Origin: Mytilus trossulus
Lineage: Eukaryota
Reading direction: 5' to 3'
NCBI RefSeq assembly: GCF_036588685.1
Contig: NC_086385.1
Location: 23,211,216 to 23,275,215, forward strand
DNA length: 64,000 nucleotides
How positions within the stretch are numbered: the first letter of the stretch is position 1; each line of letters opens with the position of its first letter. The position numbers were made by a program, and so were the translations under genes. This document shows positions 11,769-32,222 of this stretch, piece by piece. The notes beneath the pieces are model-generated. The model was not told the DNA's origin. It was given only the letters and a program-made list of their open reading frames with translations, and searched no databases.

Positions 11769-11846
11769 CAATCTCCGGCGCAGAGATCACATATCCGTTC
11801 CGTTCAATACTACGTAACACTACACTCAATATGACCTCTGCCATAC
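11769..11846 (+). repeat. AcademH left terminal inverted repeat
   Basis: The first 21 bp are the perfect reverse complement of 31621-31641; the match continues imperfectly to about 75 bp. Confidence 0.95.
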
Positions 11847-12155
11847 CTTTTTTTGCGTACTTTTTCTTCTCAATCTCTAAACAAAAATGAAATGCCTATG
11901 ATGACTTTTTTTATCAAAATTTAGCAATCAATCTTCAATTTTAAAAGAATAACAAAAGTTTTAATGAAATTTAATTAAAAAATTTATATTTATCAAATAA
12001 AAGCTGATTGTCGCACTTCTGTTATAGATTGTATTTCCTGTCAAATTATGTAAACAAAGTAGTCTGCAAAGGGATTATTTTTATTTCTGTAGCGATGTTT
12101 TTTATACATATTTCACTTTTTTTATGGATTTCTTCTTCAATTTAGATAATTTGAT

Positions 12156-15100
12156 ATGTCTTGCAATGCTTGTTATACCACAAATTCGTGGAGATTTCAT
12201 TCGTTGAAATCTGACCTTTTTTCTTTTTTCGACAAATTTACAAAGAATTTTGTATCAGTTTACATTCCAACTACCAAAAAACAAACATTGTGTAACTCCT
12301 GCTATTGTACGTTAAAGAAGTTGAAAGAGTGGAGTGAGAACATATACAGGTAACTCAAGTGCTTGAATTGTCTACATAATGAACATTTCCGTATACATGT
12401 ACACTAGTTATATTATACATAAATGTCTTTCATGAATTTGTAATCCATGACCATGTCTTATTAAATAATAATGATCTGGACCTCTGAAGTTAAAAGAAGT
12501 CTAATGAATAGCCCACAAAATTATTTTTTAATTTTTATCTAAAAAGCAAAATAAAAGGTGTAAAAAATATATATATAGTGCATGCAGTGGACCATGTTTG
12601 ACCAAGGAACTAGCCACTAAAGACTGTTATTTATCAGTAGCTATGCTATCTCTATTTAATATTGAACACAACATAGCTTGAGATAATTATTAATTATTCT
12701 TCAACTTGGTGTAACTGATATTCTTATAATCACATTCTTCGTAACATTGCAATTTTGCATGTTTGACAAACAGAACTTCTGATTTTCCTGACCAAAATTG
12801 AGTGGAGGTTTAAGTAAATTATATAGGTTAGCGATTTAGGCATTCCTAGCTATTTAAACAAGAACACAATTTTTTTTAAAGATTTAATTGTTTCTTCAAT
12901 TCTCTATGAAAAGATTGTGTAACTTATTGATGTTAATTTCTCCTTCCAGTTAAAATTGAAAGATACAAAAAATATTTATCATATGAATTACATGTACTTT
13001 ATCTGTTGATTTTCTTGTAGAACTGAGAGAATTAATACATTTAGTGATCATGCTGTGTTTCAGGAACAACATGTCAATCAATTGGTTACTGAAACAGGGT
13101 ATGTGTAGATAGTTGATGAATACGCATGAAATGTGGGGAAGGGTTCATGTCAACAATTCAGCTACCACTACACAAAAAAAAGACTTGAAAATACTAAAAT
13201 AAATATTATGAATATTAACAAACATTTATTGCACTTTTTGTACTTTTGACCTTTGTTTGATATTAGATAATTGGTCTCCATTGCCAATGATACACTAAGT
13301 GACATGATTGAAATCTTTTTGATTATTTAGCTGCTATTTAATATAAGACATAAATAAGACCTTTATTGATCTCAGTAGAATATTAAAGATAATATTATGT
13401 TGGGTAGCACTCAATGTAACAATATACAGTTGGACTATATAATTATTCAATTGTGAATATTGGTATATACTTATGTGCTTTCATCATGTTCATGTCATAT
13501 ACATTGCATAGTTCTAATTCTGATTTTAGAATTTCACCTGATCCACAGATAATTGATTGTTTAAGGAATGGTCACTTTGGTTCCATTGAGTAAGTAACTT
13601 ACCTTTATTATATATGTATACTGTGTGATTCATTAAATGCTAATTATTCATTTTATAAACATAGTACAGGTATAAGAGATTTTTTATTTAAATATTTCAA
13701 AATTTTAAAAGTTAAAACATTATAGGATATTTATTTAATTAAACCTTTTTGAATAATGAATGCACCTTTGCATTTTTTGTCATGTTTATTTCTAAGGCAT
13801 ATATATAGTGAAAGCTGTATAATGTATATATAATTACATATGCTATGGTTAAGATGGCTCTACTTACAAAATTCTACTTCGGCCAAATGAAAAAGTATGT
13901 GTGGTTCCAGTTACATCTGAAAAAAAGTTAGGGTAGGTAGTTAGGGATTTTTTTTTAATTTTATGGTTGTTTTTTTACATTGAGTCTATGGCATGTATGT
14001 GAGCAACATTCTGACTTTAATAGTGCTTAAAGAAAAATGACAATAAAATCTTTAGGGTAGGCTATTTTCAAGCCAAAAAAGTAGGGACGGTAGGGTTTCT
14101 GGAACCACACATATATTTTTATTTGGCCTTATAACAGGCTATAGTTTAAACTTGGAATAATTTTTAATAATGGCATTTGCATAATACAATGTGCATTTGA
14201 TTAATTTAGCTGTACAAATATATGTATCTAGTCAAGTGCTTGAAAATTTTGATAAATTCCATATTTATTTTGTACTATGATGTAAGAGAGTATTTTTCAA
14301 TAGAATGTACTGTGCCGCTCACAACAATATCTATACAAAATACAATGTATTAGAAGGGTTATGGACTGCTCAAAACAAATAAACAGAGAATTTATTCAAA
14401 AAGTAATACAATTATATTTGTTAGAAGTCTAGAACCTGGTCTATCACATACAGTTGGTCCAGCAGGGGATGCTGGCAGTATAGACAAATCAGAGTAAGTA
14501 ATTATCTGTAGGAACTTTAGAATAAGTGATGTCAACATATTTCATATTATATTAAAAGAAGATGTGGTATTATTGCCAATATGACATGTATGAGACAACT
14601 TTCCACAAGAGACAGATTGACACAAAAGAAATCACAGCTATACATGTAGGTCACTGTCAAGTCTTTAACAATGAGAAAAACTGTTATGGCATAGTCAGCT
14701 AAAAAAAGACAAAGTAATCACAAATGTAAACAATTCAATTGACAAAACTTATGGCCTAATCAAAGTGCAAAAAATAGATGAAAAACAATTATGGAGCACA
14801 GCAACAAACAGCCTCATTTAAATTACAGGATCTTGGCTTGGGACAGGAAAATTCAAACAGAATGTGGTTGGGTTGAAAATGTAACCAGGGACAGAGGTGT
14901 TACAGTACACAGTACATCATGAACATGACAAAAAAATATGGTCTACATGTCAATGAGATAGCTTCCGCCAATTAAAAAAATCATTTAGAAGCAATAGATC
15001 CATATCCTGTGACATACATAAATAACAAAGCTATTGAAACACCATTGTATATATGAATATGAACATGAATATAATATTATAGTTGATTGTTTAAAATGTA

Positions 15101-18100
15101 GTCTGAAAAGCAACCAACTTGCAAAAAAGTCCCAGGCACAAAGAATAATTGTAGGAAAAATGGAATTTTTATCATTTATGGGAATCTGAAGAAAAAAAAT
15201 ATCACCTATCATTTTGTACTTTTTTACATAATGTGAAATTACAATGAATTATGAGTATGCACATGTGGTTACATTCATATCAACAGTTTTATATAACTTT
15301 TTTCAGTATAAATGACACAGTTATTCCAGAGGAGGATTGCATACTATCATCAGGAGTAAAAAGATCTTTTACAGAGTATATATCATCTATATGTTTAGAT
15401 CACACTACAGCTCAGGTTGATTTTGCTTTGTCCACTCTTCCACAGTGTGAATTGGCACTGGGTGGGCAAATTCCAGCTTGTCCAGTCTGCCCACCAATAG
15501 GAGTGGGCATGTAATTTCTATTGATTAATCAAAAGACAATTTTTGCAAGTACAATCAATTGAAAAAAGCAGATAAGCATTTGTAAATAAGGAATATTAAA
15601 CAGTACTGTTATTAAAGAGTTGTCACCGTTAATTGTAGATTTGACGGTCACAAATGCAGTTTTATTGGCGACCGATATTTGCTGCCGTCAAATCAAAATT
15701 GATATTGGCAACTCTTCAACTACAGTACTGTTATTCTGGTTCTAATACATTTAAAAAATAAGATATGTAACAAGTTGAAAAAATGTATAAATTTGACATA
15801 CACAAAAAGTCAGCGAAACTTCATGAATATTTATGACCTATAAATGTCATTGATAAACGTGACGTCAAAGACTGTACATAATTTAAACTAGATCATTCAT
15901 GAGTTTGAATAAAGTTTATGCTTTCATAACTTTTAAATGCTTAGTATCTTGAAAATTTGATATGCAATAGTACTTCTATTTTTCAACATATATATCCTCA
16001 ACTCTCATACAAAATCTTGAAGACTTAAGTCAATGTCTATGAAATATCTTTTACTACCATTAAATGTTTATTTTTACAGTGACCATTCATATATCAACCA
16101 CAAAGGGCACAATACAAGTGATTCAAATGACCATGAATATTCCTGTAACTTGCACACAGAGGAGGATGAAGAAGATGATGAAGACGTCAATATTTTATGT
16201 CAGGATAGAATAAAACAAATATTAAAACTACTCAATTTAAAGAGTAATGCTGCATATGACTACCCAAGCATGTTAAGGACTTGTAGTCAGACAGATCTTA
16301 GCGAAAAAGACATCTTCATGAGCATTATTGAAGAAATGAAAACACGGTATTATTAACATCACTTCTAAAAATGATTTTTGATATGAAATATGGAGATTTT
16401 GCATGATTTTCAATGAAACTACTATATTGGTAGAGATAATTTGACTAAGATACAAACTACCTTCAACAATGAGCATAATCTTTACCTTTTAGCAAATGAA
16501 ATAAAATTTTTTATTAAAATACCAACAGTCTAATACATACATGACATACAACATCAATGATTCAAAATCACATGTGGCAGAAAAACAAAACAAATTTCAA
16601 TTGATTTATTCAGACAGATAGTTATAGAATTTTTAACATAAATATCTGCAAGAATAAATACTTCTTTGTAAGACATTATGCATTTAAACGTTATTTTCTT
16701 AAATAATGATTTCAAAAATTATTGTTCTTTTATCATGTTTGTCTCTGAATATTGAGGATGAAGATTGAATCATTATCTTTCTAGACCTGAAATCTATTTT
16801 GTGTACATACATTACCATTTAGAATACTACTTATTCAAATATTGAAATTCTTTGAACTTATATTTATTAATACATTTGTACTTAAATATTTAATATGAAT
16901 TCACTTGTATATTTGAATACCAATAGATGTCCACAACTGCTTGAAATACTGTTATCAGTATGTGTGAAGGATACGACAAAAGTTAATTTAAGGCAAATTA
17001 ACAGTGTTGCTGTTGCATATTCATCTCTAATGTTTGCTAGAAACAACAAAAACTCTGGTATACAAAGATGTATTACCCTGTTAGCTGTTAAAGGAGATGC
17101 AAATGATGAGGTACGAAAAAATCATGGTAATGTAATACAATATAGTTTGTATAAATGTCATATAACATACATTTTCTTCAGCAGGAGACCCAGTGATGAT
17201 TATTTAATGATAGGGGCTGATGTTATTGATGGAGTTTGGTTATTAAAGGTGGCACTTTGAAAATACAGCTGTTTCTCAAACCACACTTCTTTTGGGGAGA
17301 TCTAAAATATTCATAAAAAAATAATTGTGTTTACATACTGGTTCCCAGTTCTGATCTGTATGTTGCATCTAACAGAGACATATCTTGGGAATGTTACCAG
17401 TAAATATACATGTGCATATTGTTTATATTGAAATCTGTGGTAACCCTTCATTTGAGATACGGGGTAGCTAAGAAAATAAGTTTTACTTTAAAATCTGAGA
17501 AGTTCAAGGCATATAAACGTTGAAAATATGCCGCATACCGCTGTATTTCGACCTTTGAGATTAATTGAAGTGCATATGAACTTTAAATTCTTCGATAAGA
17601 TTTTTTTCAAAACTTCATAGTAAAAGTGTTACAGTTTTAGCCGCAAAAGGAGTTCCAACGGAAAATGCATTCTCAATATTTACAAAAATGCAACCTAAAT
17701 CTCAGTAAATTGAACAGCTTATGACTGGAATTGTACTCTATACCTAGATATTCTTAGATTTTATGATTTTTTACTGTTATGCCACTTGTTTTGCTCCCTC
17801 AATGCTAATTCATCTGTAACTATTACTGCTTATTGCCTAATCTTTCCCTTTTTGCTGTGTCTCAAAATATAAAATCTGTTTCTATATTCTATCACTAATG
17901 AAAGCAATGAATACAAATAGATTTTATGTTTTCCTTTAGGGCTGTTCCAAAAATAAATGTATGAGGGCACTTTTTATTTGACCCCACAATGCATGAATTT
18001 TTATTTGAAAATTTCCTTTAAATGGTAAAGTTATTAAACACTACCCATCAAATTGTATTTAAAGTGCCTTATGACCCCCATACAATTAATTCTGGAACAA

Positions 18101-21100
18101 CCCTTATTGTATACTGTAAATTCAGACATTGAACTGACTTATCCCATGAAAAAACAAATATGTGTCTAATTAGATTAATTATTGGAATTTCTATACAAGT
18201 TGATAATTATAGATATATGTACAGGATATAAGAAAACTAGTTATTTTTCTTTGATATATGGTTACCAAGTTGCATAAATCATAATCATTTCTGAATTTAC
18301 AGTATACTTTTGCTTCCCATTTAGGTTACAGCTTTACTTTCCTTTCACATTAACAAAATACATTATATGAAAGTCTGTATAAAATGGTAAATACACCTGC
18401 TGTATGTTGGTTCGAATCCAACTGCAGACAAAGCAATGTATCTTAGTATAGCTAGCTATTAACACTTAAACTGTGAAATCATTCTTATAAGCATTTTGGT
18501 ACTTTGGTAATATGAAAAATGTTATTCAATATAACATTTTCAAAATTCTTTTCCTATGATTCCATTTTAAAAAAAATGAATTCAATGAAAAATTACCTTT
18601 TATTATAAATTTACAATATTTCTGATTATCTGATTTTCAACTATTACTAATAAGGACAAATACATTTATTATTGATAAGAATGACTTCACAGTGCTTACT
18701 GCTATTTTTGGTGAAGGTGCATTATTAACTAGTTACAAATACATTAGTAATAATTGATAATGACAGCACTATTTCATACATGTTTTATTTTTAATTCTAT
18801 TTCATAGTTTATCAGAAGATTGAACAGGATGTCGTTAAGCCTTTCCTGTTCTGGAAAATTAAGAATTCTTGATAAGGCTGTACTTGCGTCACATAATATG
18901 CTGGTTGAAGCAATTCGTACAAACCCTTTAATGAAAATTACTGGGGATAACTTGGATATGTATATCAGAACAAACCACCAAAGGACAGACAATAGCAACC
19001 AGGATATACACTGGTTTGCCTCTAATGCATTTTTCACCAGACTTAATTACCAAAATCTTCCTGAAAACACACCAGAAGTTAGTCCAGTTTCTGTTGCTAA
19101 TTTTGTTAGCATGGTTCACTTGTTCTTAAATTAAGAATTTCTTTTTGAATTTGTTGAAAGCTGGAAGTATTATTTCTCATGGATTGTTATCTGATTATTG
19201 CTTTACATAGGCAGTAACTGTTTTAGTTTCCTTATCCAGCAATTAATTTAAAAAAAGAAAAATTCTATCCAAATCAATAATTATTTTTTTATGTAATCAT
19301 GACTTAAATTTAATCGGATACTGTGCTTTACAATATTATTCCTTTATTATAATCTATTGATTGATTAACAATTTACAAACAGTTAAGAAATGTAATTTTT
19401 TTATTCATACAAATTATCAGTCTGGAAATTAGGAAAATTAGTGTAATTGTAAGGTAGCATGCATTTATATATGTTTTACATTTTTTTACAACTTTAACTC
19501 ATAATTATTATTTTACACAACATGTTATTGAAGCCATTTTTGATGAGTTCTGTTTTTCACACTGATGTTTTCTTACAGGTGACATGTTCCAATTAGTGTT
19601 TGAGTCTTGTGATCATTATGTTCTTTTTTCTATTTAATGGGTTATCATATTTAAAAATTTGATTATTAAATTGTACTATTAAAGTGCAATTGAAAATATA
19701 TTTCAAGATTATAGTATATGGTGTAGGTGTAGTCCAGTTGATCTTGTCAATTTCAAGATGATTTTTTTACATTTTGGCTGTTCATGAATTATGGTACTAG
19801 ATGATTGGAAAATTGAATTCATTTGAAATTTTTATATTTTTCTTTCCCAGACTACCTTCAAACATTGTGCAAGTATAAATATCAATAAACTATGACTTTT
19901 TTTATAGGTTAGACTGAAAGACATAGATGCAGAAATGTTTGTATTAACTGGAGGGGAAACAATGAAGCTGAATGATGTAAAGAAGGTTTTGATAGGTCGT
20001 CTTCTATGTGACAGGGATGACTTTCAGTGGCTTAAAAATAAACTACCACAACATATACCACATCGGTACAACTTTAAATCTTAATATATGGGAAAAAAAA
20101 TTACAACTGTCCTCAATGGAATGGGTCTGAGTAGTACAAATGTGATTTCATTTTATGTTGTGAATTTATTTTGAACATATTTTTACATATTTTTCAGCAA
20201 ATCAAATGACTTTTGTTGTCCAGATAAATTTGGGATATAAATAAAATAAAATAAAGGATATGGTTAACTGACTTTACAGTATAAACTTTGCTCATGGTTG
20301 AAGGCTGACAGTGACCTTCATCTGAATATCTGTGTCAATTCATCTTTGGTGGACAGTTATCTCATTGGCCATCATCATACCACTTCTTCTTCAATTTTAT
20401 AAAAATAAGTTGCGACATATATAAAAACGAGAATCAAGTGATGAGAACTTATTTTGATCAGATTGCATCTTCTTTCATATAATGACACAAAACTGGTGTA
20501 TAACAAAACACAAAATGCAGTAGAATAAGGTTTTAATTGCTATTCTTCATTTCAAAATTAGTGATGACTTCAACATGAAGCAAATACTATCACCTAACTA
20601 CATCTATAATATCATATGGCTCCTAGCACTAGTTTGATTGGCTTTTATAAACATATTACATAAAAGAATTAAAGAAGTAACAGAAATATCATATCAATAT
20701 AGTACCTTATATTATATCGTAATACATGTATTTCATTTGGCATTTTTTAATTTTAAGATACAGTGACAGCATGTCAAAGAAACAGCATGTCTATACATTG
20801 AAAATAATGTTCAAGAATGAATCTAAAAATGAAGACTGTCTGGATATAATGGGCGAATACGAAGATCAAATAATTGATTTGCACACAAAGGCATATGGTA
20901 ATAAAGGCATTACAATGAAACCTGGCTAAACCAAATCCTACCTAAAACCGAAGACCTGTATAAACCAAAATTGTTCTGAAGCACGGTCATATCAAATTGT
21001 ATGCTTTCTTAATTCCTGTGGAGGTTCCTTTTTAAATAGGTTTCATTGTAGTATACCTTGCACACTGTTTATTACAGTTTTTCATATCTGATTTGGATTT

Positions 21101-24100
21101 CAGTATCCTTTCTATTATCATTTGCACTTTCACTTTCTTTCTTATATAAAAAAAAATGTTGCATTTGTTCATGATAGCCATCAAAATTCAATTGAAATTT
21201 AAAATGTTTTAATATTTTTAATATTCCTATTACAGGAAATACAGACAATTTAGATAAATATGGAGTAGTTTTAGGAGGAGATATGTTGACCAGGGAAAGA
21301 TTACAAAATGCTAAAAACATCACATATTTAGCTCCAACACCAAGGGGTAGATTTGAACATTTAGCCCCAGTCACTTGTGAACTTTGGCATGTGAAGCAAG
21401 ATCTTCTATCTGTATGTTTTATTGTATTCATACCTAGTCCCTTAAGCAATTTTGATATCACCAAGCATTCTGAGTGCAAGGACCATAACTCTCAACAAAT
21501 TTGTAACTTTATCTGTTACTTGTCATCATAAATCAAGATACCAAATTTCAAATCAATATCTTCAAGCTGTAAGAAAAATTGTGGAAAAACTTATTTGACC
21601 AAATGCAAAACTAAAGTCCATTTAAACTTTATGCTCATTTTGTTTCTTAAATTATGCACTGTACTGGCATCAATTTTCAAGTCTATTTTTTTTTATTTCA
21701 CCTAAGCGCATACCTAATATTGTATTAAAAGGATTTTAAAAAACAGAATTGAAGTTATTTTAACATTGTCTTTATGTCAATTTTTTAGAAAGCATATAAA
21801 GCCTTATATAAAATTGATTCATTGGGAGAGTGTGGAACTTTGTTTCACATGAAGACAGCATTAAGGAGGAATGATGTGAATGGAAATGTAAAGTCCAACT
21901 ACAAAGCCCATGAGGAACTATTTCTGCTGATTGTGAAAGCATTAATTCACGTAGCCTCAGATGAGATAAGGGATTGCAAAGAACAGAACAGAGACGTTGT
22001 CCTTAGTAATGTTTTTTCAAAAATTTATGGTTTGTATAAAATAATGATTTCCATATAATTATTTCATTGGTACGATAGCAAAACATGCAAAAGTTATTAG
22101 CATAAAGGGACAACCCGTGGTAAAATCTAGATATATTCAAGCCCCCATGAATTATTTCGATTCTAATAGGACAAATACGGCTACTTTTTTGGATCGAAGC
22201 GCCCTAGGTGGAGGCCATTATTTGCCGTTCCCATAAATTCACGCACTTTTAGATTGGCGTAAAAGAACGGAGCAAACAGAATAAGTGACATGCTCAAACT
22301 ATTCACAAAACTTATAAAGATAGATTTCGATGAATTTTAATGATAACTTACTTAAATATGCCTTCTATGTATAAAAAAAATGGGCTTATACCACATTTTT
22401 GCATCGTTTGTTTACGTTTCCTTGTTGTGATGATTTTCGGTATCAAAAGCGTGTATTTTCCCGTAAAATGCTTAAATTATAACGTCATCATTCTATGACG
22501 TCGGGTACTTCATTCATTAAAAAAACATATGACGTGGGAGTACGATCGGAACAGCCAATGCAATATATTCATATTTTACCACGGGTATGTACTCAAAGCG
22601 TTTGAAGGACGTCATGTTAGAATACTTTACATTTATGTTCATGGAATGTAAAGATTTCAAATTCTACCTGGTAAGAATTCTACTGACTGTGACAGAACCA
22701 TGAAATCAAGTATTACACATTCTCGGAAAATTGATTCCCAAGAAAAAAAGTTGAGTCTACACTATTTAGAATAACAAATTTAAAAATAAAAAACTGGAGG
22801 CTTTCCTATATAGATATAGGAAGATGTGGTGTGAGTGCCAATGAGACAACTCTCCATCCAAATAACAATTTAAAAAGTAAACCATTATAGGTTAAAGTAC
22901 GGCCTTCAACACGGAGCCTTGGCTCACACCGAACAAAAAGCTAAAAAGGGCCCCAAAATTACTAGTGTAAAACCATTCAAACGGGAAAACCAACGGTCTA
23001 ATCTATATAAACAAAATGAGAAACGAGAAACACGTATATATTACATAAACAAACAACAACTACTGTACATCAGATTCCTGACTTAGGACAGGTGCAAAAT
23101 GTACACCTAATGACCAAGCTAAATAAATTGTAGGAATGACCTGGCAGATATACATAATATATGAAAACCTATTGGTTACCTTCTGCTGTTGTCTGTTCTA
23201 TGGTAGGGTTGATGTCTCTTTTACACATTCCCAATTTTCATTCTCAATTTTATATGAAGAAGATGAATGGTTACAATTTATAAAACTGTTTGTGGATGCA
23301 AATGAATATAAACAGTTATTTTTTAGGTCTAGGATACAGCACAGATGATTACATTTACAACTACTTCACAAATTTAATAACCTGGGGTATTCAAATAATT
23401 AACATGAATGACACAGCAAAGGAAGGGGACATGGAGAGACTTATAATGAATATGAAGGAAAATGCAGCCTTTTTTTTACAGCCACTCAGTAATGAGCAAA
23501 TATTTTTCTGAGTGCGTTAACACCATCTTACAAGTACAGCACCTATCATCCCCTCATATGAAAATGAGACAGCTAGAAGGGGCATTCATTAATACCAAAG
23601 GAGGTTCTGGTAAAAACAAAGAAGCAGACCTGGTGCAGGAGCATGCCATTAGAAATCAGAAGGACTTAATAAGAGGTTTAGGTAAGAAACATAGACTTAG
23701 CCTCCAATCACCCAAGTATTGTTACTGTAATTGTACTTCTGTATAAAAGTTTCCTGTTGGAATTATCTCCCTTATACCATTGACCTAACTTAAAAAAGGA
23801 GTTGCTTCATATTCTTAATTAATTTATTATTTTTAAACAGTTTCAAATTTAATATCTAAATATATGGGATCCATATTGTCTTAATGATTGAATTTGTATA
23901 TAACTATTTGTAACAACACACAATCAGGATAAATTTGTAAGGTGGGGTGATGTGAACCTGATAATTTTTCGCTACATTGAAGACCTGTTGGTGACCTTCT
24001 GCTGTTGTTTTTTTATTTGGTTGGGTTGTTGTCATTCCCCATTTCCATTCTCAATTTTATCATATTATACAATTGCACACTATGAATCTAATATTGCTTA

Positions 24101-24592
24101 CGGCCAATTAAATCTATTAAAAAGGGCTAATATATTACTTTCATTACTGTACTAAACAGTAAGATATTGGGAGTAATACATTCAGACAAAAGCTTGAACA
24201 GTTTCATAATATAAAGAAAACATCAGTCACATCTGTATTACTTATTGATCTTAAAGTTGAATATAATTTTTATTAATGTAGGAGCAAATAAAACTGAAAA
24301 TGGTTCCAGGAGAGCTAGCAGCTCAGCAGACATCATCCATCGAATAGGAGACAATGTAGACCATCTTCTTGGTATACCTAAATTCACATCAAGCCATGCC
24401 AAGAAAACGTCATCTAAAGATCTGGAAATTGCTATAAACATTTTAAGTAAAGTTCAGCCATTTAAATATGTTAAGGGTAGGAAATTTGAAAGTTTTAAAA
24501 CAATACAAAAAAATCCAAAACTAATTGTTCAAAGGAAAGATCTAATACATGCCATCCATAAAAAAATTCAGAGGTTATTTTTAAATTCATAA
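12156..24592 (+). CDS. Academ (DUF6589-like) DDE transposase, 14 exons, about 907 aa; one +1 frameshift in a T8 run
   Basis: Phase-consistent GT-AG exons: 12156-12349, 13021-13098, 13512-13589, 14425-14493, 15307-15510, 16080-16346, 16927-17110, 18808-19077, 19908-20065, 20758-20897, 21236-21411, 21789-22029, 23327-23681, 24282-24592. Motifs: N-terminal CxxC..CxxC, ITGDNLD, GGDMLTRER, ELWH, KEGD, SKY, NTKGGSGKNKEADLVQEH, LGANKT. One extra T at 23470-23477. Exons 2-5 are less certain. Confidence 0.82.
13881..14128. mobile_element. MITE in transposase intron 3
   Basis: Imperfect TIRs of about 28 bp: GGCCAAATGAAAAAGTATGTGTGGTTCC and GGAACCACACATATATTTTTATTTGGCC. Confidence 0.7.
17936..18106. 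mobile_element. MITE in transposase intron 7
   Basis: Imperfect TIRs of about 30 bp: TAGGGCTGTTCCAAAAATAAATGTATGAGGG and CCCCCATACAATTAATTCTGGAACAACCCTTA. Confidence 0.65.
18373..18430 (+). ncRNA. tRNA-like structure, copy 1 (58 nt), transposase intron 7
   Basis: Acceptor-like stem GTCTGTA/TGCAGAC, a stemless D-like loop containing TGGTA, a 5-bp arm ATACA/TGTAT with a 5-nt loop, and a T-arm GTTGG-TTCGAAT-CCAAC. Confidence 0.6.
22807..23100. repeat. Abundant SINE-like interspersed repeat
   Basis: ATAGATATAGGAAGATGTGGTGTGAGTGCCAATGAGACAACTCTCC...ACTAGTGTAAAACCATTCAAACGGGAAAA is nearly identical to 34271-34453. Related copies lie near 14555, 42335 and 55790. Confidence 0.75.
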
Positions 24593-24959
24593 TTTTTTCT
24601 ATAGTGTGTTTATAGTTTCATAGAAAATCAGGTGCCTATATCTACTGAACTTTGTGTTTCTATTAAAAAAAAAATTAGAATAACTTATTTACTGAATGTC
24701 AATAGCATATAAGTCATAACCATTAATTTTTCAATGCATGTAAATTTCTCTCCACTAATATTGAAAATGAAATGAAGGTAAAAGCAATTTTCAGTTAATT
24801 TTACTTACACATTACAATAATTTAATGTTATTTTTGAAACTAGATATATGCCGAAACAGTGGTCTAAAATACCAATAAACATTATGTAAATGTTACTGAT
24901 GATTATACTGGTGCTATTTTTACCTTAAAATCAATCATTACTATAAAATATTGGGGATT

Positions 24960-25830
24960 GAAGAAACAACTTCATTGTTGTTTTATAGATTTTAAAAGTG
25001 TTTTTGACAACTTGAATACATTTTTTTTATATCATAAACTTGCTAAATGTGGTATTAGTGTAAGTTTTTTTCCATTATTAAATCTTTCTATGATATTTCA
25101 ATGACCTGTGGGAAATTTAAAGGTGAATTTTCTAATATATTTTCTGTAGAAAAAAGAGTATTACAAGGGGAATCATTATCAACCATACTATTTTTTTTTT
25201 TTTTATGATTTTGAATATTAGTTTATTTTATAGCTTATTTCTGTTTTACCAGTAGACACGAAATAGCTGTCATTGTTTATATTGATGTTTGTTATATTTT
25301 CTGAGAGTATTGATGGGTTGTAAAATATGTTGAGTATTCATAATGTATCAGATAGAAAAATAAAAAAAAATCAGTTAGAATTTTGTAAATATATTTATAC
25401 TATTAAGAAATCCCCTGCTACAGCAATGGTTTATTCTGAGTTGGAAAGATTTCCTTTACTTATATGTTAATCAGTAAAAATATCCAAATATTGGATTTGT
25501 CTATTACGAGTCTGAATCAGGAAATATGTCATCATGGGTTACTAATGTTAAACCTATGTTGCTTAGCCAAGGTTTTGGGCATGTATGGTATGCACAGAAT
25601 TTTGAATGCGAAGAAGCATTTTTTATTCAAACTAAGGTTTATTGACCAAAAGGGAAATATGCTTTTCGATTCATCATCAAAATGAACGATCTATAAATAT
25701 GAAGTGGATAACTGTTTAACTGACATTTTTTTCACAAATAAGTTAAGTCCACAATGTATCAGATTTTTAACTAAATATAGTCATTTCCTAAGGGGAGGTA
25801 AATTAGTTCCCAATGTTTTGTATCAATTAG
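24960..25830 (+). pseudogene. Highly degraded LINE (RT) remnant between the AcademH genes
   Basis: 25156-25192 reads RVLQGESLSTILF (RT motif QGxxLSPxLF); a later segment reads AMVYSELERFPL. Many stops and deletions. Boundaries are approximate. Confidence 0.5.
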
Positions 25831-27420: not shown

Positions 27421-30400
27421 TTACAATTCCATTCTCAACATCTCACATTCAATACAGGAACATATTGGTTTACAGTTGTTACAGCAGATATGACCCTTTA
27501 CATCTGTTTTTTCAAAGCCATACTGCTGTAGTAGGTATTCTCGAATGCAACCCTTTTCCCTACAAAAACCAATAATATCAGGCTTGATATCAACTACATT
27601 AGCAGCAATATCCCTATTGCTGTAATAAAGAACAGCATTGGCTGCATTCCCTGAACGACCAGCACGCCCAATCTCTTGGACATAATCTGACAGTGATCTT
27701 GGTGGACGTGCATGGATGACTCTCATAATTGATTGAGAATTAAACCCCATACCCACAACTGAGGTGCAAAACACAAGTTTTATCCTTGGGTTTACACAAG
27801 CCAACTCTTTAATTATATAATTTTTTACACTGTCATCCTGACCACTGCAGAGAACACCGTATACAGATGTTTCAAGGGTAGGTTTCTTGAATATATGTTT
27901 GCAGTAGGCAGCTGCATTGCCTATATACTGTAATGGCATAAATAACAAAGTAACTGGAAAAGTTTCCCTATTTTCAAACAAACTGTCACAAAGTGGCCTA
28001 TATATATTTTCATAGGACTCATAAATATCTAGGGATGCCTCTTTAAGTTTGATTTCCAGTAAAATGTTTTCCCTATCAGGACTTTCCTTAATAACTTTTG
28101 GATTTTTTATCCCTAAAGAACTAGTAACCGCCTTCTCTTCTTGTTTCGTGACAGTGGCACTAAGTCCCAATCTGGGTACTCCTGGAAAAAATCCTGGAAG
28201 CTCTTTCAGGTGTTCAAAAGCTTTCCTGAAGGATCTCCCCCTATTCATAAAAAAAGAAGTAATGATCATGCATTTTGATAATAACCATTTAATAAATAAA
28301 GTTAAATACACCACCACCAAATAAAAGGGATATAAGCAATATGAAATCATTTTTCCCAATAAAACTCTGATTTTATTAAATATGGTGTTAAAATTTGTGT
28401 TCTGTATTTGTTACAATTTTTGTTATCTACATGAAATAAATTTGAAAGAAAACCAATGAATCTAATAATCCAAGAATGAATAATATGATATTATTCATTC
28501 TTGGATTATTATTAATATCTATTATATTTCAAAAACAATACAGGTCACAGATAATTGGAAAAAATGCATTCACAGTGGAATGTTAATAGCTGAAATAATA
28601 TACATTGTTTGTCCGCAGTTGGAATTGAACCAACATACAGCAAAGTGTATTACCCTATAGATACAGACTTCTTTATAATGTATGTTGTTAGTAAGGGTGA
28701 GATAAAATGTAAATAAAAAATTAAGATAAAAGCATTAATTACTAAATGTTAACAAAAAGCTTTAAAAAACCACATTAAAAGCTTATACTAGCTGCATTAT
28801 AGAAGTTGACAGTGGATGAAAACAGGAAATTTAACCAGAAGCTAAAACATGTAAAATGCAGATATGCACTGAAAATAAATTAATAAAAAATAGGTCACCC
28901 AAGATCAATTTTACTTATTGTTAAGTTAAAAAAATGTCTTGCTACATGTTGCAGATAAATTCCATTAGGCCAACTGTAAGGAGTTTTGCTAGAAGTAATA
29001 AATATACAAAAAACATATACATTACTGGTAAGTCTTAACATTAGAAATGGAAATACATACCTTGCTTTCTCTTTTATACTTACATTATCTGTTTAAAACA
29101 TTTCAAACAGTATCAGTAAAATCTGATTCATGTCAAAATGTGAACTTTAAATCAATGGTAATATAAAAAAACAAAAACAACAAAATATTATTGAGGTTAT
29201 ATAAGTAATATTGATTTTTAAAATTGAAAAAAAAAAATGCCAGATCTTGAGAACAAGTTACAAATTTGATAAGAAAGGTGATAAGCCAGACTTTACTTTC
29301 AAAGAAATGACCAATGCTTGATAAAATATATAAACTATGTTAATCATTGACCAATATACAGGGTAACACACAACCAGGACAAAAGCTTAAAGAATTACGT
29401 TTAAATTGTTTTATAAAGTGTAATAGATGTCCATTAATGTCACCTAAAAAGTATGGAATGTTACCAGTATTTATTTATATATTCAATACATTTTGCTATT
29501 GTCCAGCAGAAAAAAGTTGTCAAACTGAATCTGAAATTAAAATACAACTAGAGCTGAAACGTACCAATCTGCAACTTTATGACATTCGTCAATAAAAATT
29601 GCCTTCACTGAAGATTTGAAACTACAAGAAATATAAAGTAAGAAAAACATGGAATTTTACTATTGACTGTTTTGGCCACTTGAATGTATTTTAAATGCAC
29701 ACATAACGTTGTTCTAAATTCATATTAAGATCAAAATTCTCAGTTCCATTATCATTATTTGTTGGCAAAATTTAACACGAATTTTCTGTAAATGGTTTTC
29801 AGAAAAAAAATGTGAAAAACTAAACTCTAAGGGATTGCTTAATTTTAACCAGACTGCAAAACCAACATTCCATTTTTATAGCATTATTGCTTTAAAGAAC
29901 AATTTAACATGGGAAAGAAGTGATGCATAAGTCAAAAATCTTTTTTTTTTAATTTCTTGATTATTTTTTCTATATATAATTAATACATGCATATAAATAG
30001 TTTAATACCTAGAGGAATCCAAGATATCATTTCCTTCTGAAGTACAGAAGAAGGCTTCTGGATGAGCAAATATTAAGTTACAATTGGATATATCTGAAGT
30101 ATCTATATCACACTTAAGATCTTGGATATTTTCCTCATTCCCTGCAGTCAACAGTCTTCCCTGTGGAATAAAGGAGCACAGTTAAACTATGTAAAACTAC
30201 CTACCAAGAATTATTAGATACTGAAACAGAAGAAATTAAATACATGTGTAGCCATCAATCAAGAATCATGATTTATGAATCTAGATTTTATCAAATTCAT
30301 GCCCCATTCAATGAATCAGAAACTACTTCTTGACGAAACCAAATACTTTTGAACATATGATACATGTACATGTAACTACAAGATTTAGAACAACCTTATA

Positions 30401-31485
30401 TATATATATGCATGTATATGTATAACCTGCAGTTGACAACTTGAAATATTAAGTACAGTATTTGAGTAAAAAAAAAAATTAACAGGTGAGCCATGCATAA
30501 GCATGTAACTGGTACCAGATTAACATGAATATCTCAAAGTCTTCAAATATCAGTTAACTTTAATTTGGTATGTTAGTAAAACTGTTTCGTCCCGGCCAAG
30601 GGTACTCATCAGGTGCCTTAAGGCTACCACTACAGTCATCTGTTACATATACATTTTTTTTAACTAATTATAAGAACAAATGGTATTAGTTAGTGATCAT
30701 CTCTTTGCACTCATATTCTGAAATATTTCACTTAAGAGATCTTTTAGACCTTAAAAAAAATATTTGAGGTGTTCATAAGGGTCTGTGGAGTTCAAAAAGT
30801 GGGGTGTTATAGACGTTTCTTTTCTGTTATCTGTAGATATTTGGACTCTTAGTCTTCTAATTTGTTGAATTAATAATTGGAATATTATAAATAAGTACCA
30901 ATTTAAACGATAAAAGTCAAAATAATAAACTTTTTTGGTGTTCGGTGGTGTGCGGTGGTGAAAAGACCTACCGGTTTATTTTGGCACCTTCTGCAGGAAA
31001 GAAAAAACTGGAAAGCAAAATCTAGTAAAGTTTTTAAAATTTCTGAAACGTTTACTTTAAAATAACTTTTATATATCTGCCATGCCTTAAAACTTTCCTA
31101 GATGTACCAGTTTCTCTACTCAAATAGTAAATTTTTAGGGGTAAACACGGCCATATTTTTAAATTCCTTATGATGAACCTGAAGAATAAGAGTAGATTTT
31201 TACCCTGGTATTTAATATACAACATTTCAGTGCTTCTGAGTTCTTCAACTGTTTTACTTGCTCTTCTTGGATGACACTGAGAGGTGAAAAAACAATCACA
31301 GTGCCGTCCAAGATTAGCGGAGCCAGTTGGTATATGAGGCTCTTTCCATAACCAGTTGGCAAAATCGCTACTGTTTCAAGTGTTCCTTTTCTGATTTCGT
31401 CCAACACTTCAATTTGTTTAGGTTTCAGTAGTATGTTAGGATGACCAAGTCCAAGACGTCTAAGCGGGATTTCGTAATCCGCCAT
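27421..31485 (-). CDS. RecQ-like SF2 helicase of AcademH, 4 exons, 436 aa, intact
   Basis: Exons 31485-31204, 30160-30009, 29621-29565 and 28240-27421 splice in frame (1311 nt). Motifs: LPTGYGKS, SPLSVI, AHPE, FIDECH, WGRSFR, LSAT, CTSVVGMG, YVQEIGRAGR, and a C-terminal CIR...CCNNC Zn-binding segment. Confidence 0.92.
28463..28511. repeat. Perfect 24-bp inverted repeat with 1-nt spacer
   Basis: TAATAATCCAAGAATGAATAATAT-G-ATATTATTCATTCTTGGATTATTA. Confidence 0.95.
28610..28668 (-). ncRNA. tRNA-like structure, copy 2 (59 nt), helicase intron 3
   Basis: The minus strand reads GTCTGTA TCTATAGGGTA ATACA CTTTGC TGTAT GTTGG TTCAATT CCAAC TGCGGAC A. The stems match copy 1; differences fall in loops or give a G-U pair. 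Confidence 0.6.
30581..30636 (-). ncRNA. Type III hammerhead ribozyme in helicase intron 1
   Basis: The minus strand reads ACTGT-A GTGGTAGCCTTAAGGCAC CTGATGA GTACCC-TTGGCC-GGGAC GAA-ACAGT. It has a complete CUGANGA/GAAA core, a GUA cleavage triplet, closed stems I and II, and an open stem III (ACUGU/ACAGU). Confidence 0.8.
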
Positions 31486-31566
31486 TTTTTACAAATAGCC
31501 CTTTCACCGCCTTAGATACTTCCGCTTGTCCGCCATGAGGAAATTTCCTCATGGAGTCAGCCAATC

Positions 31567-31641
31567 GTATGGCAGAGGTCATATTAAGTGTAGTATTGCG
31601 GAGCACGTAAGGAACGGATATGATCTCTGCGCCGGAGATTG
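31567..31641 (-). repeat. AcademH right terminal inverted repeat
   Basis: Reverse complement of the left TIR, followed directly by the TSD ATGGTAATG. Confidence 0.95.
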
Positions 31642-32222
31642 ATGGTAATGCTGCTCAACTAGTGCTCTTGCTTGACTCCATTGTGGACCATTACAAACAA
31701 GACCATAGAAACTGTCATCAAACATCTAGATACAAAAAAAATGACTATGTGCCGTCGCGAGATATTATTCGGGATCCAACAGCCGAGTTGTTGCTAAGGA
31801 ACAGTATAAAAAACCTTTATATTTATAAGCATCCAGAAAAGTATACTCATTGTCGTGACACTCATTATATTGAGAGTTATCATAATACAATTCTCATACA
31901 TGTGGATAAAAGGTTACATTATCATAATTTAATGTATGAAATTAAGTTGGGACTATCAATACTTGATTGGAATGAACATGTTGATAGACCTGCTTCATCA
32001 GTACAACACCGTGTGCAACATGACCATCCACGTCGACAATCTGGATATCGGGTTTTGACACCAAAACAATATACTTTTACAGATGAATTATGGAATAACT
32101 TTGTAAATCTGTTAAATCATGACCGCAATGACCAAATTGAGCCCGATGATGTTGAAAATGTTCAAATAGACCAAAATGATACAATTGGTAGTGAATATGA
32201 AGATTCAGATGATGATGAGTAA
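31642..32222 (+). pseudogene. Kolobok-type DDE transposase, 3' part
   Basis: Continues the 5' part in frame once AcademH is removed: GNAAQLVLLLDSIVDHY..DH..CH...RDTHYIESYH (catalytic E)...DKRLHY...LSILDWNEHVDR, ending in an acidic tail. Confidence 0.8.

What the first reader, a model, noticed from the sequence alone, without database searches (positions are those of the whole stretch)
18345..18485. tRNA-like (mascRNA-sized) fold in transposase intron 7, with a homolog in the helicase gene
Seen: a block of about 140 bp here matches the reverse complement of about 28565-28692. Its core folds into a 7-bp acceptor stem, a stemless GG-containing D-like loop, a 5-bp arm with too small a loop for an anticodon, and a canonical T-arm. 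Flanking ATACATT/AATGTAT could form an outer stem. Known: the 58-nt mascRNA and menRNA are tRNA mimics cut out of Pol II transcripts by RNase P and RNase Z. Inference: this is a transposon-borne processing signal or small RNA. I know of no description of this in Academ.
Basis: partly seen in the sequence, partly recalled or inferred. Interest (0 to 1): 0.78.

Follow-up and report, generated by a model that had tools for sequence, protein, structure and literature searches.

The report
tRNA mimic inside transposon introns
A short tRNA-shaped RNA module is kept, in reading direction, inside an intron of each of the two genes of a mussel cut-and-paste transposon family, which suggests the transposon uses the cell's tRNA machinery on its own transcripts, although no RNA evidence could be obtained.

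Summary
Block A (window 18348-18497, +) and block B (28694-28558, -) are homologous. Each holds a 57-58-nt tRNA-shaped core: a 7-bp acceptor stem, a GG loop without a stem, a 5-bp hairpin and a canonical T arm.

It is not a scattered SINE head. A strict pattern finds 82 copies in the 1.3-Gb genome, against 0 for the reversed control. Of the 53 strong covariance-model hits, 47 lie in this helicase-encoding (AcademH-type) transposon family or in its 5-kb non-autonomous derivative.

Wherever a neighbouring exon was identified (19 of 19 cases), the block lies upstream of it on the same strand. Between diverged elements, only three intronic stretches still align: the two blocks and a hammerhead. 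The blocks are 80-86% identical; the exons are 70-82%.

Acceptor pair 5-68 occurs as G-C, A-U, U-G and C-G. One distant lineage still scores as a tRNA in Rfam.

Function is unproven. The gene was silent in the three RNA-seq runs laid. My best reading is a tRNA mimic in the Pol II transcript that RNase P and RNase Z process, as with mascRNA. Rivals are an intronic splicing element, a Pol III/TFIIIC site, and a relic.

The scan has notes on this window only, none on other DNA.

The parts
18348..18497 (+). Conserved block A in the transposase-gene intron: leader, tRNA-like core, and a conserved tail of about 65 nt that ends at a T run
   Evidence: The covariance model scores 102.6 bits at 18348-18445. 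blastn to the diverged element L046 gives 80.3% over 147 nt at 18351-18497; the rest of the intron gives no blastn hit there, and a global alignment shows about 46-55% identity beside the block.
18373..18430 (+). tRNA-like core of copy A: acceptor stem 18373-18379/18423-18429, GG loop 18380-18390, hairpin 18391-18405, T arm 18406-18422, discriminator 18430
   Evidence: Read from the sequence, the fold, pair counts and RNAalifold.
18358..18364 (+). Leader strand of the outer helix (ATACATT). It pairs with 18435-18441.
   Evidence: The distal pair varies between lineages as A-U, G.U and G-C (sequences).
18435..18441 (+). Trailer strand of the outer helix (AATGTAT)
28558..28694 (-). Conserved block B in the helicase-gene intron
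   Evidence: The covariance model scores 90.7 bits at 28596-28693. blastn to L044 gives 85.7% over 119 nt, and to L045 81.8% over 143 nt.
28611..28668 (-). tRNA-like core of copy B: acceptor stem 28668-28662/28617-28611, T arm 28634-28618
   Evidence: Read from the sequence and the fold.
16916..17131 (+). Transposase exon upstream of block A (context)
   Evidence: tblastx gives 67-68% aa identity to L007, L009 and L046.
18784..19116 (+). Transposase exon downstream of block A (context)
   Evidence: tblastx gives 76-77% aa identity to L007, L009 and L046. Genome-wide homologues of this exon are listed.
27424..28245 (-). Last helicase exon (Helicase_C), about 350 nt downstream of block B (context)
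   Evidence: Pfam PF00271 matches at 3.4e-10. tblastn of the annotated Mytilus proteins P0002-P0004 maps to it.
30005..30178 (-). Helicase exon upstream of block B (context). A further possible exon lies at 29510-29638.
   Evidence: tblastn of P0002-P0004.
30581..30639 (-). The second kind of conserved intronic island in the same element. Scan note s1-829976 reads it as a hammerhead.
   Evidence: blastn to L044 gives 86.7% over 60 nt. I did not test the ribozyme call myself.
11769..11846 (+). Left terminal inverted repeat of the host transposon
   Evidence: Alignment of the two ends. The terminus recurs genome-wide.
31568..31645 (-). Right terminal inverted repeat. The 9-bp direct repeat ATGGTAATG flanks both ends.

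Best explanation
The block is a tRNA-derived RNA structure module, a tRNA mimic. It has a 7-bp acceptor stem stacked on a canonical T arm, a GG loop, a short hairpin in place of the anticodon arm, and a leader-trailer helix outside the core. A group of helicase-encoding (AcademH-type) DNA transposons of this mussel carries one copy, in sense orientation, in an intron of the transposase gene and one in an intron of the helicase gene.

Shown here:
- It is tRNA-derived.
- It is low-copy and carried by the transposon.
- It is positionally conserved.
- It evolves more slowly than the surrounding intron and at least as slowly as the exons.
- Its stems are maintained on the sense strand.

Inferred mechanism: the module is transcribed as part of the Pol II pre-mRNA or excised intron. 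RNase P and RNase Z recognise it through the acceptor/T-arm unit. Cleavage at its 5' and 3' ends releases a small RNA of about 58 nt and cuts the intron, as happens with mascRNA from MALAT1 and the intronic tRNA-like RNA of Arabidopsis GUT15. The outcome would be a transposon-made small RNA, a dampening of transposase and helicase mRNA output, or both.
For: 1. Origin. A distant lineage copy (L057, C4:44333068-44333130) scores 40.9 bits against Rfam tRNA, above the gathering score of 29. It has an intact D arm and an anticodon arm cut down to 13 nt.

2. Distribution.
- The 29-mer core with up to 2 mismatches finds 50 hits, control 0.
- The strict gapped pattern finds 82 hits, control 0.
- Of 53 covariance-model hits at 67 bits or more, 11 are in coding elements and 36 in the 5-kb non-autonomous derivative. 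That derivative shares the family's left terminus, and the right terminus was seen in one copy, L012.

3. Position and strand. All 19 blocks that have an identified neighbouring exon lie upstream of it on the same strand: 9 on the transposase side and 10 on the helicase side. These include lineages whose helicase exon is only 28-44% identical in protein.

4. Constraint. Between the window element and the class-ii elements, only three intronic segments still align: block A (80.3%/147), block B (85.7%/119) and the hammerhead (86.7%/60). Exons are 70.7-82.2% identical. The global alignment gives 79% at the block against about 46-55% in the adjoining intron.

5. Structure.
- In 34 copies the acceptor stem is 97.5% paired and the T arm 99.4% paired.
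- Pair 5-68 occurs as G-C 25, A-U 4, U-G 4, C-G 1.
- Pair 6-67 occurs as U-G 29, C-G 4, U-A 1.
- The covariation score is 0.149 against 0.081 when shuffled (0 of 500 shuffles as high).
- RNAalifold finds the same three helices.
- Pairing is better on the sense strand than on the antisense strand: acceptor 97.5% against 82.8%.

6. T loop. Among the nine lineage representatives compared, it varies only at positions 57 (G or A) and 59 (A or T). Those are the positions that vary in real tRNAs (the tRNA rule is recalled knowledge). Individual copies do carry other changes (TTGGAAT, TTCGAAA, TTTTAAT).

7. Leader-trailer helix. It covaries (A-U, G.U, G-C). Its 5' strand lies 9-15 nt upstream of the acceptor stem. 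By recalled knowledge of where Pol III starts, that is further upstream than a Pol III pre-tRNA leader usually reaches. A leader-trailer interaction promotes RNase P processing of MALAT1 (PMC8457004, abstract).
Against: - There is no RNA evidence. In three RNA-seq runs (1.3, 1.8 and 1.9 billion letters read), depth over 18392-19127 is at most 0.12, and the bin 18208-18391, which holds the block's 5' part, is at most 0.7. The exons are silent too. No small-RNA library was examined.
- The window copies are not called tRNA by ARAGORN or Rfam. They lack a D stem, so whether eukaryotic RNase P accepts them is unknown.
- No conserved stabilising element of the MALAT1 type lies upstream. Conservation starts only about 25 nt before the core.
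- The conserved 65-nt tail is not explained by this model.
- Several AcademH copies have no detectable block: C19 (its two matched exons have no internal stops), C2:92760916, C1:76122309, and lineages with 39-47% protein identity. So the block is not indispensable. The covariance-model search scored only 150 candidates, so absence is not proven.
- Most double-sided changes sit at a single pair.
- The copies are related by descent, so the shuffle control is not a probability.
Confidence: 0.42

Rival explanations
1. The block is an intronic splicing regulatory element. The tRNA-shaped fold binds proteins near the 3' part of the intron and changes splicing efficiency of the host intron, either enhancing it (as human nimtRNAs do) or inhibiting it (as the GUT15 tRNA-like does). 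It is not itself cut out as a stable RNA.
For: - The block is always intronic, in sense orientation, and a few hundred nt upstream of the next exon. Distances are about 340 nt for A, about 350 nt for B and about 270 nt for C4:44333043.
- The diverged 159-bp arrays also end 150-190 nt upstream of putative exons.
- Conservation extends into the leader, the trailer and a 65-nt tail, beyond what RNase P and RNase Z need.
- Precedents: nimtRNAs promote splicing, need the cloverleaf, and are not processed as tRNAs (PMC7722341, abstract and section titles). The GUT15 tRNA-like inhibits splicing of its intron (PMC6152437, abstract).
Against: - The non-autonomous derivative, which has only degenerate exon remnants, keeps the block and has duplicated it.
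- The distance to the 3' splice site is not fixed: 270-550 nt, and kilobases in some copies.
- No splicing data exist.
Confidence: 0.2
2. The block is an autonomous Pol III unit or a TFIIIC-bound B-box site. In this reading the T arm is conserved as an internal promoter or TFIIIC site. It would either drive a small tRNA-like transcript that ends at the downstream T run, or act at the DNA level as a chromatin boundary that shields the transposon genes.
For: - The T-arm sequence GGTTCGAATCC, with variants GGTTCAAATCC and GGTTCAATTCC, fits the B-box consensus as I recall it in every lineage.
- A run of 4 or more T follows 14-63 nt downstream in all lineages and closes the conserved block in four of them.
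- The tRNA-scoring lineage L057 has a better A-box-like D arm.
Against: - The A-box region is degenerate in the window and in most lineages, which have no D stem.
- Compensatory changes in the acceptor stem and in the leader-trailer helix are not explained by promoter function. The leader strand lies further upstream than Pol III usually starts (the start position is recalled).
- T4 runs are expected by chance within about 60 nt of such AT-rich sequence (my estimate is roughly 0.6-0.7, not computed by a tool).
- The strict sense orientation is not needed by a Pol III unit. However, it reflects only two independent placements.
Confidence: 0.15
3. The block is a neutral relic. A tRNA pseudogene or tRNA-derived SINE landed in an ancestral element, was duplicated into the second gene, and has been copied along passively ever since.
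For: - The block is clearly tRNA-derived.
- Some copies decay: there is a 25-nt deletion in the two C9 copies, and T-loop C56 is changed to G in C8:74958745 and in one class-iii copy.
- Several family members lack it.
- No expression was seen.
Against: - The block is the only part of either intron that still aligns between lineages. It is as conserved as the exons or more so.
- It survives at 77-81% identity next to helicase exons that are only 28-44% identical in protein.
- Stem changes are compensatory or wobble-compatible, and are better on the sense strand.
Confidence: 0.1
4. The block is a DNA-level cis element for transposition, for example a binding or loading site for the element's helicase or transposase, placed symmetrically in the two halves of the element.
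For: - The two copies point inward from the two ends. Because the genes are convergent, this cannot be told apart from 'sense to both genes'.
- The recently amplified non-autonomous derivative keeps the block and has duplicated it: 22 loci, with whole-locus identities of about 94-99% to L021 among the copies compared.
Against: - The non-autonomous derivative has copies in one orientation only.
- At least 12 further termini lie in elements without any block, including head-to-head terminus pairs about 130 bp long. So the block is not required for mobilisation (one search compared).
- U.G pairs kept on one strand point to RNA.
Confidence: 0.06

Closest known systems
mascRNA / menRNA (tRNA-like small RNAs cut from MALAT1 and NEAT1 by RNase P and RNase Z)
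   Same: Both are tRNA mimics of about 58-60 nt inside a Pol II transcript, with an acceptor stem, a canonical T arm and an undersized anticodon-like arm. In both, a leader-trailer pairing lies outside the acceptor stem (PMC8457004, abstract).
   Different: - This block sits in introns of protein-coding transposon genes, not at the 3' end of a lncRNA.
- No conserved upstream triple-helix or A-rich stabiliser was seen.
- The D stem is absent in the window copies.
- Processing is not shown.
- It is an invertebrate transposon element, not a vertebrate host gene.
GUT15 intronic tRNA-like RNA of Arabidopsis (PMC6152437, abstract)
   Same: Both are tRNA-like sequences encoded in an intron of a Pol II gene. 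The GUT15 one is reported to be released from the Pol II transcript, not to be transcribed by Pol III on its own, and to affect splicing of its intron.
   Different: GUT15 is a plant host lncRNA present as a single locus. Here the module is carried by a mobile element, occurs twice per element, is conserved across diverged lineages, and has been amplified into tandem arrays.
[quoted passage not shown]
   Same: Both are intronic tRNA look-alikes whose fold is maintained. The nimtRNA effect depends on structure and on position within the intron.
   Different: nimtRNAs derive from mitochondrial DNA, keep a full cloverleaf and lie in host genes. This block has a nuclear-type T loop, lacks a D stem and lies in transposon genes.
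tRNA-derived SINE heads and tRNA-related MITEs
   Same: All derive from a tRNA, carry a B-box-like T arm and are multi-copy.
   Different: - Only 82 strict matches occur in 1.3 Gb.
- The copies are not dispersed on their own. They are embedded at fixed intronic positions of a DNA transposon.
- No A-rich or LINE-type tail was read in the copies I looked at. I did not check for target-site duplications around the block.
- Orientation is not random.
Retrozymes and other hammerhead-bearing repeats of animals
   Same: Both are small structured RNA-processing modules carried by mobile DNA and prone to tandem repetition. A hammerhead-like island is conserved in the same helicase gene (scan note s1-829976).
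   Different: The module here is not self-cleaving. It would depend on host RNase P and RNase Z. The host is a DNA transposon gene, not a non-coding retroelement.

Membership tests
Canonical tRNA gene (Rfam RF00005 / ARAGORN) | Scores as a tRNA with a four-arm cloverleaf | tested here: not met
   Window: ARAGORN finds 0 genes. Rfam finds 0 at the gathering score and no tRNA hit at E up to 10. ARAGORN at default settings finds 0 in 9 of 9 lineage representatives, and relaxed runs give inconsistent calls. Only the distant relative L057 passes Rfam tRNA, at 40.9 bits against a gathering score of 29.
Canonical tRNA gene (Rfam RF00005 / ARAGORN) | Anticodon arm of 17 nt with a 7-nt loop | tested here: not met
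   The window copies have a 5-bp stem with a 5- or 6-nt loop. L057 has 13 nt in place of 17.
mascRNA-type tRNA mimic processed from a Pol II transcript | Acceptor stem stacked on a T arm with a canonical T loop, and an undersized anticodon-like arm | tested here: met
   Among the nine lineage representatives compared, the T loop varies only at positions 57 and 59.
mascRNA-type tRNA mimic processed from a Pol II transcript | Cleavage by RNase P at the 5' end and RNase Z at the 3' end, then CCA addition, giving a stable small RNA | not testable with these tools
   Only standard RNA-seq runs were reachable, and the locus was silent in them.
mascRNA-type tRNA mimic processed from a Pol II transcript | Upstream triple-helix (ENE plus A-rich tract) that stabilises the cut 3' end | tested here: not met
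   No conservation is seen beyond about 25 nt upstream of the core between lineages. I did not run a dedicated ENE search.
tRNA-derived SINE | High copy number, dispersed independently of other elements, in either orientation | tested here: not met
   Counts are 50 hits, 82 hits and 53 strong covariance-model hits. 47 of those 53 lie inside the transposon family. 19 of 19 blocks with a neighbouring exon are in sense orientation.
tRNA-derived SINE | Internal Pol III promoter with A and B boxes | tested here: inconclusive
   The B-box-like T arm is intact in all lineages. The A-box region is degenerate because there is no D stem. The consensus motifs are recalled, not taken from a call.
AcademH (helicase-encoding Academ DNA transposon), as host element | Two genes, a transposase plus a helicase | tested here: met
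   DEAD (PF00270) and Helicase_C (PF00271) exons lie on the minus strand and are mapped by P0002-P0004. A multi-exon gene on the plus strand is conserved in other copies.
AcademH (helicase-encoding Academ DNA transposon), as host element | Terminal inverted repeats and target-site duplication | tested here: met
   The element has inverted repeats of about 78 bp and a 9-bp direct repeat, ATGGTAATG, at both ends. That AcademH makes duplications of 9-10 bp is recalled. The paper was not held.
AcademH (helicase-encoding Academ DNA transposon), as host element | Transposase homologous to Academ transposases | not tested
   Pfam gave no hit for the plus-strand exons. The label comes from scan note s1-830151.
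Intronic splicing element of the nimtRNA type | Intronic location in sense orientation, with a maintained fold | tested here: met
Intronic splicing element of the nimtRNA type | Measurable effect on splicing of the host intron | not testable with these tools
   No spliced reads were found on the locus.

The most novel reading that the evidence does not exclude
These mussel DNA transposons carry an RNA-processing toolkit in their own introns: a hammerhead ribozyme in one helicase intron and tRNA mimics in one intron of each gene. The toolkit cuts the elements' transcripts or releases small or circular RNAs. That would give a cut-and-paste transposon a post-transcriptional way to set its own transposase and helicase dosage, or to make a trans-acting small RNA. 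The tandem 201-bp and 159-bp arrays would then be dosage amplifications of that RNA.
Probability: 0.2. Interest if true: 0.85.

Novelty: new variant of a known kind. Interest (0 to 1): 0.62.

Why it matters
Conserved non-coding RNA structures are hardly known inside the genes of eukaryotic DNA transposons. In this family, intronic islands keep a tRNA shape through compensatory changes across lineages whose proteins have diverged to 28-44% identity.

If the module is processed like mascRNA, it would be the first case I know of in which a cut-and-paste transposon recruits RNase P and RNase Z to its own pre-mRNAs. It would extend tRNA mimicry, known from vertebrate lncRNAs, plant introns and viruses, to mobile DNA in molluscs.

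It also gives a cheap experimental handle: one northern blot or small-RNA library from mussel germline or embryos.

If the module is only a splicing aid or a relic, it is still a useful marker for this transposon family.

My searches of the held library listed no paper that describes it (I read listings only). Repbase and the AcademH paper could not be consulted.

Tried and rejected
- High-copy SINE head: rejected on the counts and on context.
- Genuine tRNA gene: rejected for the window copies.
- MALAT1-type triple-helix module: no conserved upstream element.
- Phylogeny to prove that A-type and B-type copies are orthologous across elements: the deep nodes are unresolved. Only nearest-neighbour distances fit: winA is nearest the transposase-side copies and winB nearest the helicase-side copies.
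- Global alignment of the helicase intron misplaced the block, so I used local BLAST instead.
- Pair counts within the 24 closest copies showed no double-sided change. Covariation appeared only after the diverged lineages were added.
- Expression: one run search and one read-laying run. The locus was silent, so nothing can be said about processing. Depth at 17104-17655 comes from an unrelated repeat.
A metagenome pattern scan found 0 matches. Whether the block exists in M. galloprovincialis, M. coruscus or M. edulis therefore remains untested, although helicase homologues are annotated there.
- Identity of the loci that hold the 159-bp arrays: the two 1.2-kb flanks showed putative short exons but no match to the helicase proteins or to the window. 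No AcademH helicase or transposase exon and no terminus hit fell within the array loci.
- The AcademH paper was not held. A search for 'Academ' was swamped by 'academic'.
- Supplements of papers were not opened.
Full report
OBSERVATION

Block A (window about 18348-18497, plus strand) and block B (about 28694-28558, minus strand) are homologous. They show 80% mean column identity over 233 aligned columns. Their 27-nt core occurs twice in the window, against 0.00 expected in 100 shuffles.

Read from the sequence, each block holds a 57-58-nt core with these parts (coordinates for copy A):
- a 7-bp acceptor stem, 18373-18379 with 18423-18429
- a stemless loop containing GG
- a 5-bp hairpin with a 5- or 6-nt loop, 18391-18405
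- a 5-bp T stem with the 7-nt loop TTCGAAT, 18406-18422
- the heptamers ATACATT and AATGTAT on either side

Folded alone, copy A's minimum-free-energy structure and centroid, and copy B's minimum-free-energy structure, contain the acceptor stem plus T arm. Z-scores are -2.5 and -1.9. ARAGORN and Rfam call no tRNA in the window.

WHAT CARRIES IT

The window lies on contig C13 of a 1.3-Gb assembly. A protein name and a matching contig length identify the species as Mytilus trossulus.

The host element runs from 11769 to 31645. It has terminal inverted repeats of about 78 bp and a 9-bp flanking duplication. It holds a multi-exon gene on the plus strand. On the minus strand it holds a DEAD/Helicase_C gene, whose exons are mapped by annotated Mytilus proteins at 31485-31195, 30178-30005, possibly 29638-29510, and 28245-27424.

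Block A lies between the plus-strand exons 16916-17131 and 18784-19116. Block B lies about 350 nt upstream of the last helicase exon. Both blocks are therefore intronic and in sense orientation.

I did not test whether the plus-strand gene is an Academ transposase. That label comes from scan note s1-830151. I could not verify the intron number.

COPY NUMBER AND CONTEXT

The family is small:
- The 29-mer core with up to 2 mismatches gives 50 hits, reversed control 0.
- A strict gapped pattern (5' acceptor strand plus T arm) gives 82 hits, control 0.
- A covariance model built from 24 distinct copies gives 114 matches at E up to 1 among the 150 candidates scored. 53 of these score 67 bits or more.

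The 53 strong hits divide as follows.
- 11 hits lie in 7 coding elements: the window; a 98% twin on C8; and diverged elements on C4 (two), C5, C12 and C8.
- 36 hits lie in 22 loci of a roughly 5-kb non-autonomous derivative. It keeps the family's left terminus (the right terminus was seen in one copy, L012) and only degenerate exon remnants. It carries the block in one to three copies, tandem at a 201-203-bp period where more than one.
- 5 hits belong to a diverged group I call class 4.
- 1 hit is on C7.

Class 4 copies lie 1.3-7 kb upstream, on the same strand, of Helicase_C exons that are only 28-44% identical to the window's. This holds for 4 of the 5 copies. One of them also has a DEAD-type exon about 1 kb upstream.

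Two still more distant copies, C4:44333043 and C4:42400357, lie 270 bp and 2.2 kb upstream of helicase exons of 36-37% identity, again on the same strand.

In total, 19 of 19 blocks with an identified neighbouring exon are upstream of it and in sense orientation.

The results against a universal role are these. AcademH-type copies on C19 (its two matched exons have no internal stops; 56-65% protein identity), at C2:92760916 and C1:76122309, and in lineages of 39-47% identity, have no detectable block. At least 12 further termini belong to elements without a block. The two C9 copies carry a 25-nt deletion that removes the T arm.

CONSTRAINT

Between the window element and the diverged class-ii elements, blastn aligns the termini, the exons (70.7-82.2% identity) and only three intronic islands:
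- block A, 80.3% over 147 nt
- block B, 85.7% over 119 nt
- a 60-nt island at 30581-30639, 86.7%, which another scan note reads as a hammerhead

A global alignment gives 79% identity at the block against about 46-55% in the adjoining intron.

Class 4 blocks are 77-82% identical to the window blocks although the neighbouring protein exons are 28-44% identical.

STRUCTURE SUPPORT

Within the 24 closest copies the stems hardly vary, and no double-sided change occurs.

I then added class 4, the C7 copy, the C4:44333043 copy and four units of a 159-bp repeat, giving 34 sequences. With these added:
- The acceptor stem is 97.5% paired and the T arm 99.4% paired.
- Acceptor pair 5-68 occurs as G-C (25), A-U (4), U-G (4) and C-G (1).
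- Pair 6-67 occurs as U-G (29), C-G (4) and U-A (1).
- The covariation score is 0.149 against 0.081 in shuffles, with 0 of 500 shuffles as high.
- Sliding the partner by 1-3 columns drops pairing to 30-45%.

RNAalifold predicts the same three helices on its own. Pairing is better on the sense strand than on the antisense strand: acceptor 97.5% against 82.8%, T arm 99.4% against 95.3%.

Among the nine lineage representatives compared, the T loop varies only at positions 57 (G or A) and 59 (A or T). Individual copies carry other changes. The outer leader-trailer helix keeps 5-8 bp in most lineages. Its distal pair is A-U, G.U or G-C (sequences). The helix is weakened in the non-autonomous derivative, where it is 81% paired overall.

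Three caveats apply. The copies are related by descent. Most double-sided changes fall on one pair. The MAFFT alignment is unreliable for the outer helix and for the middle of the most distant copy.

ORIGIN

The distant copy L057 scores 40.9 bits against Rfam tRNA, above the gathering score of 29. It has an intact D arm and an anticodon arm reduced to 13 nt. The family is therefore tRNA-derived, and the window copies have additionally lost the D stem.

DIVERGED TANDEM ARRAYS

About 56 weaker covariance-model hits (31-45 bits) lie in 159-bp tandem arrays. These arrays occur at 4-5 large loci plus a few fragments. At each large locus the plus-strand arrays are on the left and the minus-strand arrays on the right.

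BLAST links the unit to window block B at 77% identity, E 3.8e-7.

The two arrays I could examine end 150-190 nt upstream of putative short exons. These did not match the helicase proteins or the window.

EXPRESSION

I laid three raw RNA-seq runs of the same species and one contig set on 16000-21500. Depth over 18392-19127 was at most 0.12, and the bin 18208-18391, which holds the block's 5' part, was at most 0.7. No splice joints of the gene were seen. The gene was silent in those samples, so nothing can be said about processing. No small-RNA data were available.

INTERPRETATION

Shown: a low-copy, tRNA-derived module carried by the transposon, positionally conserved and structurally constrained, on the sense strand.

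Inferred as most likely (0.42): it is read in the Pol II pre-mRNA or intron and recognised by RNase P and RNase Z. Precedents are mascRNA (PMC8457004, abstract) and the GUT15 intronic tRNA-like RNA (PMC6152437, abstract).

Rivals:
- a structure-dependent splicing element, as for nimtRNAs (PMC7722341, abstract; 0.20)
- a Pol III unit or TFIIIC site (0.15)
- a neutral relic (0.10)
- a DNA-level cis element (0.06)

NOVELTY

Five literature searches, read as listings only, showed no description of a tRNA mimic in DNA-transposon introns. I class the finding as a new variant of a known kind: a tRNA-mimic RNA module in a new host context.

Noticed in passing
G000 C1:98878222-98920262, C1:29567011-29599188, C3:35836142-35877923, C9:43389046-43430770, C4:40218601-40238143 (sample in L051): These loci hold 159-bp tandem arrays in which each unit carries a diverged homologue of the tRNA-like block (acceptor strands GTCTTCA/GGGAGAC, T loop TTCAATT). 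There are 4-5 large loci, with plus-strand arrays on the left and minus-strand arrays on the right. Two arrays end 150-190 nt before putative short exons. The genes were not identified.
   Followed up: partly
L012-L030 and L048, e.g. G000 C8:2019073-2024029: A non-autonomous derivative of the same transposon, about 5 kb long, occurs at 22 loci (whole-locus identities of about 94-99% to L021 among the copies compared). It keeps the family's left terminus (the right terminus was seen in L012) and carries the block as a tandem repeat of period 201-203 bp, in one to three copies.
   Followed up: partly
window 30581-30639 (-): This is the second kind of intronic island conserved between diverged elements (86.7% over 60 nt to L044). 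Another scan note reads it as a hammerhead ribozyme. I did not test the ribozyme call.
   Followed up: no
L057 79-141 (G000 C4:44333068-44333130): This distant family member passes Rfam tRNA (40.9 bits against a gathering score of 29). It has a full D arm and a 13-nt anticodon arm. It lies 270 bp upstream of a helicase exon of 37% identity.
   Followed up: partly
L004 and L005 1509-1581 (G000 C9:76903314, C9:76335178): Two copies of an element that is 85% identical to the window's carry a 25-nt deletion. It removes the hairpin's 3' strand and most of the T arm.
   Followed up: no
window 17104-17655: This stretch of the same intron has RNA-seq depth of about 1-6 on either strand in all three raw runs, and very high contig depth in X1. 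Many reads continue into unlike sequence, so it is an abundant expressed repeat unrelated to the block.
   Followed up: no
window 11760-11769 and 31645-31655: A 9-bp direct repeat, ATGGTAATG, flanks the terminal inverted repeats of about 78 bp. Both inverted repeats start CAATCTCCGGCGCAGAGAT.
   Followed up: partly
G000 C12:11256903-11257035, C43:2871446-2871584, C8:17926470-17926592, C1:71809844-71809968: These are head-to-head pairs of the transposon terminus about 130 bp long. They look like minimal MITE-type derivatives and have no tRNA-like block.
   Followed up: no
window 35535-36653 (+): An ORF with weak reverse-transcriptase (RVT_1) and GIY-YIG matches. As I recall, this combination is typical of Penelope-like retroelements.
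   Followed up: no
window 18442-18497 and 28610-28558 (-): The conserved tail after the core holds the motifs GCTATTAACA and CTGTGAA and then a T run. These are shared by several lineages. No model here explains them.
   Followed up: no
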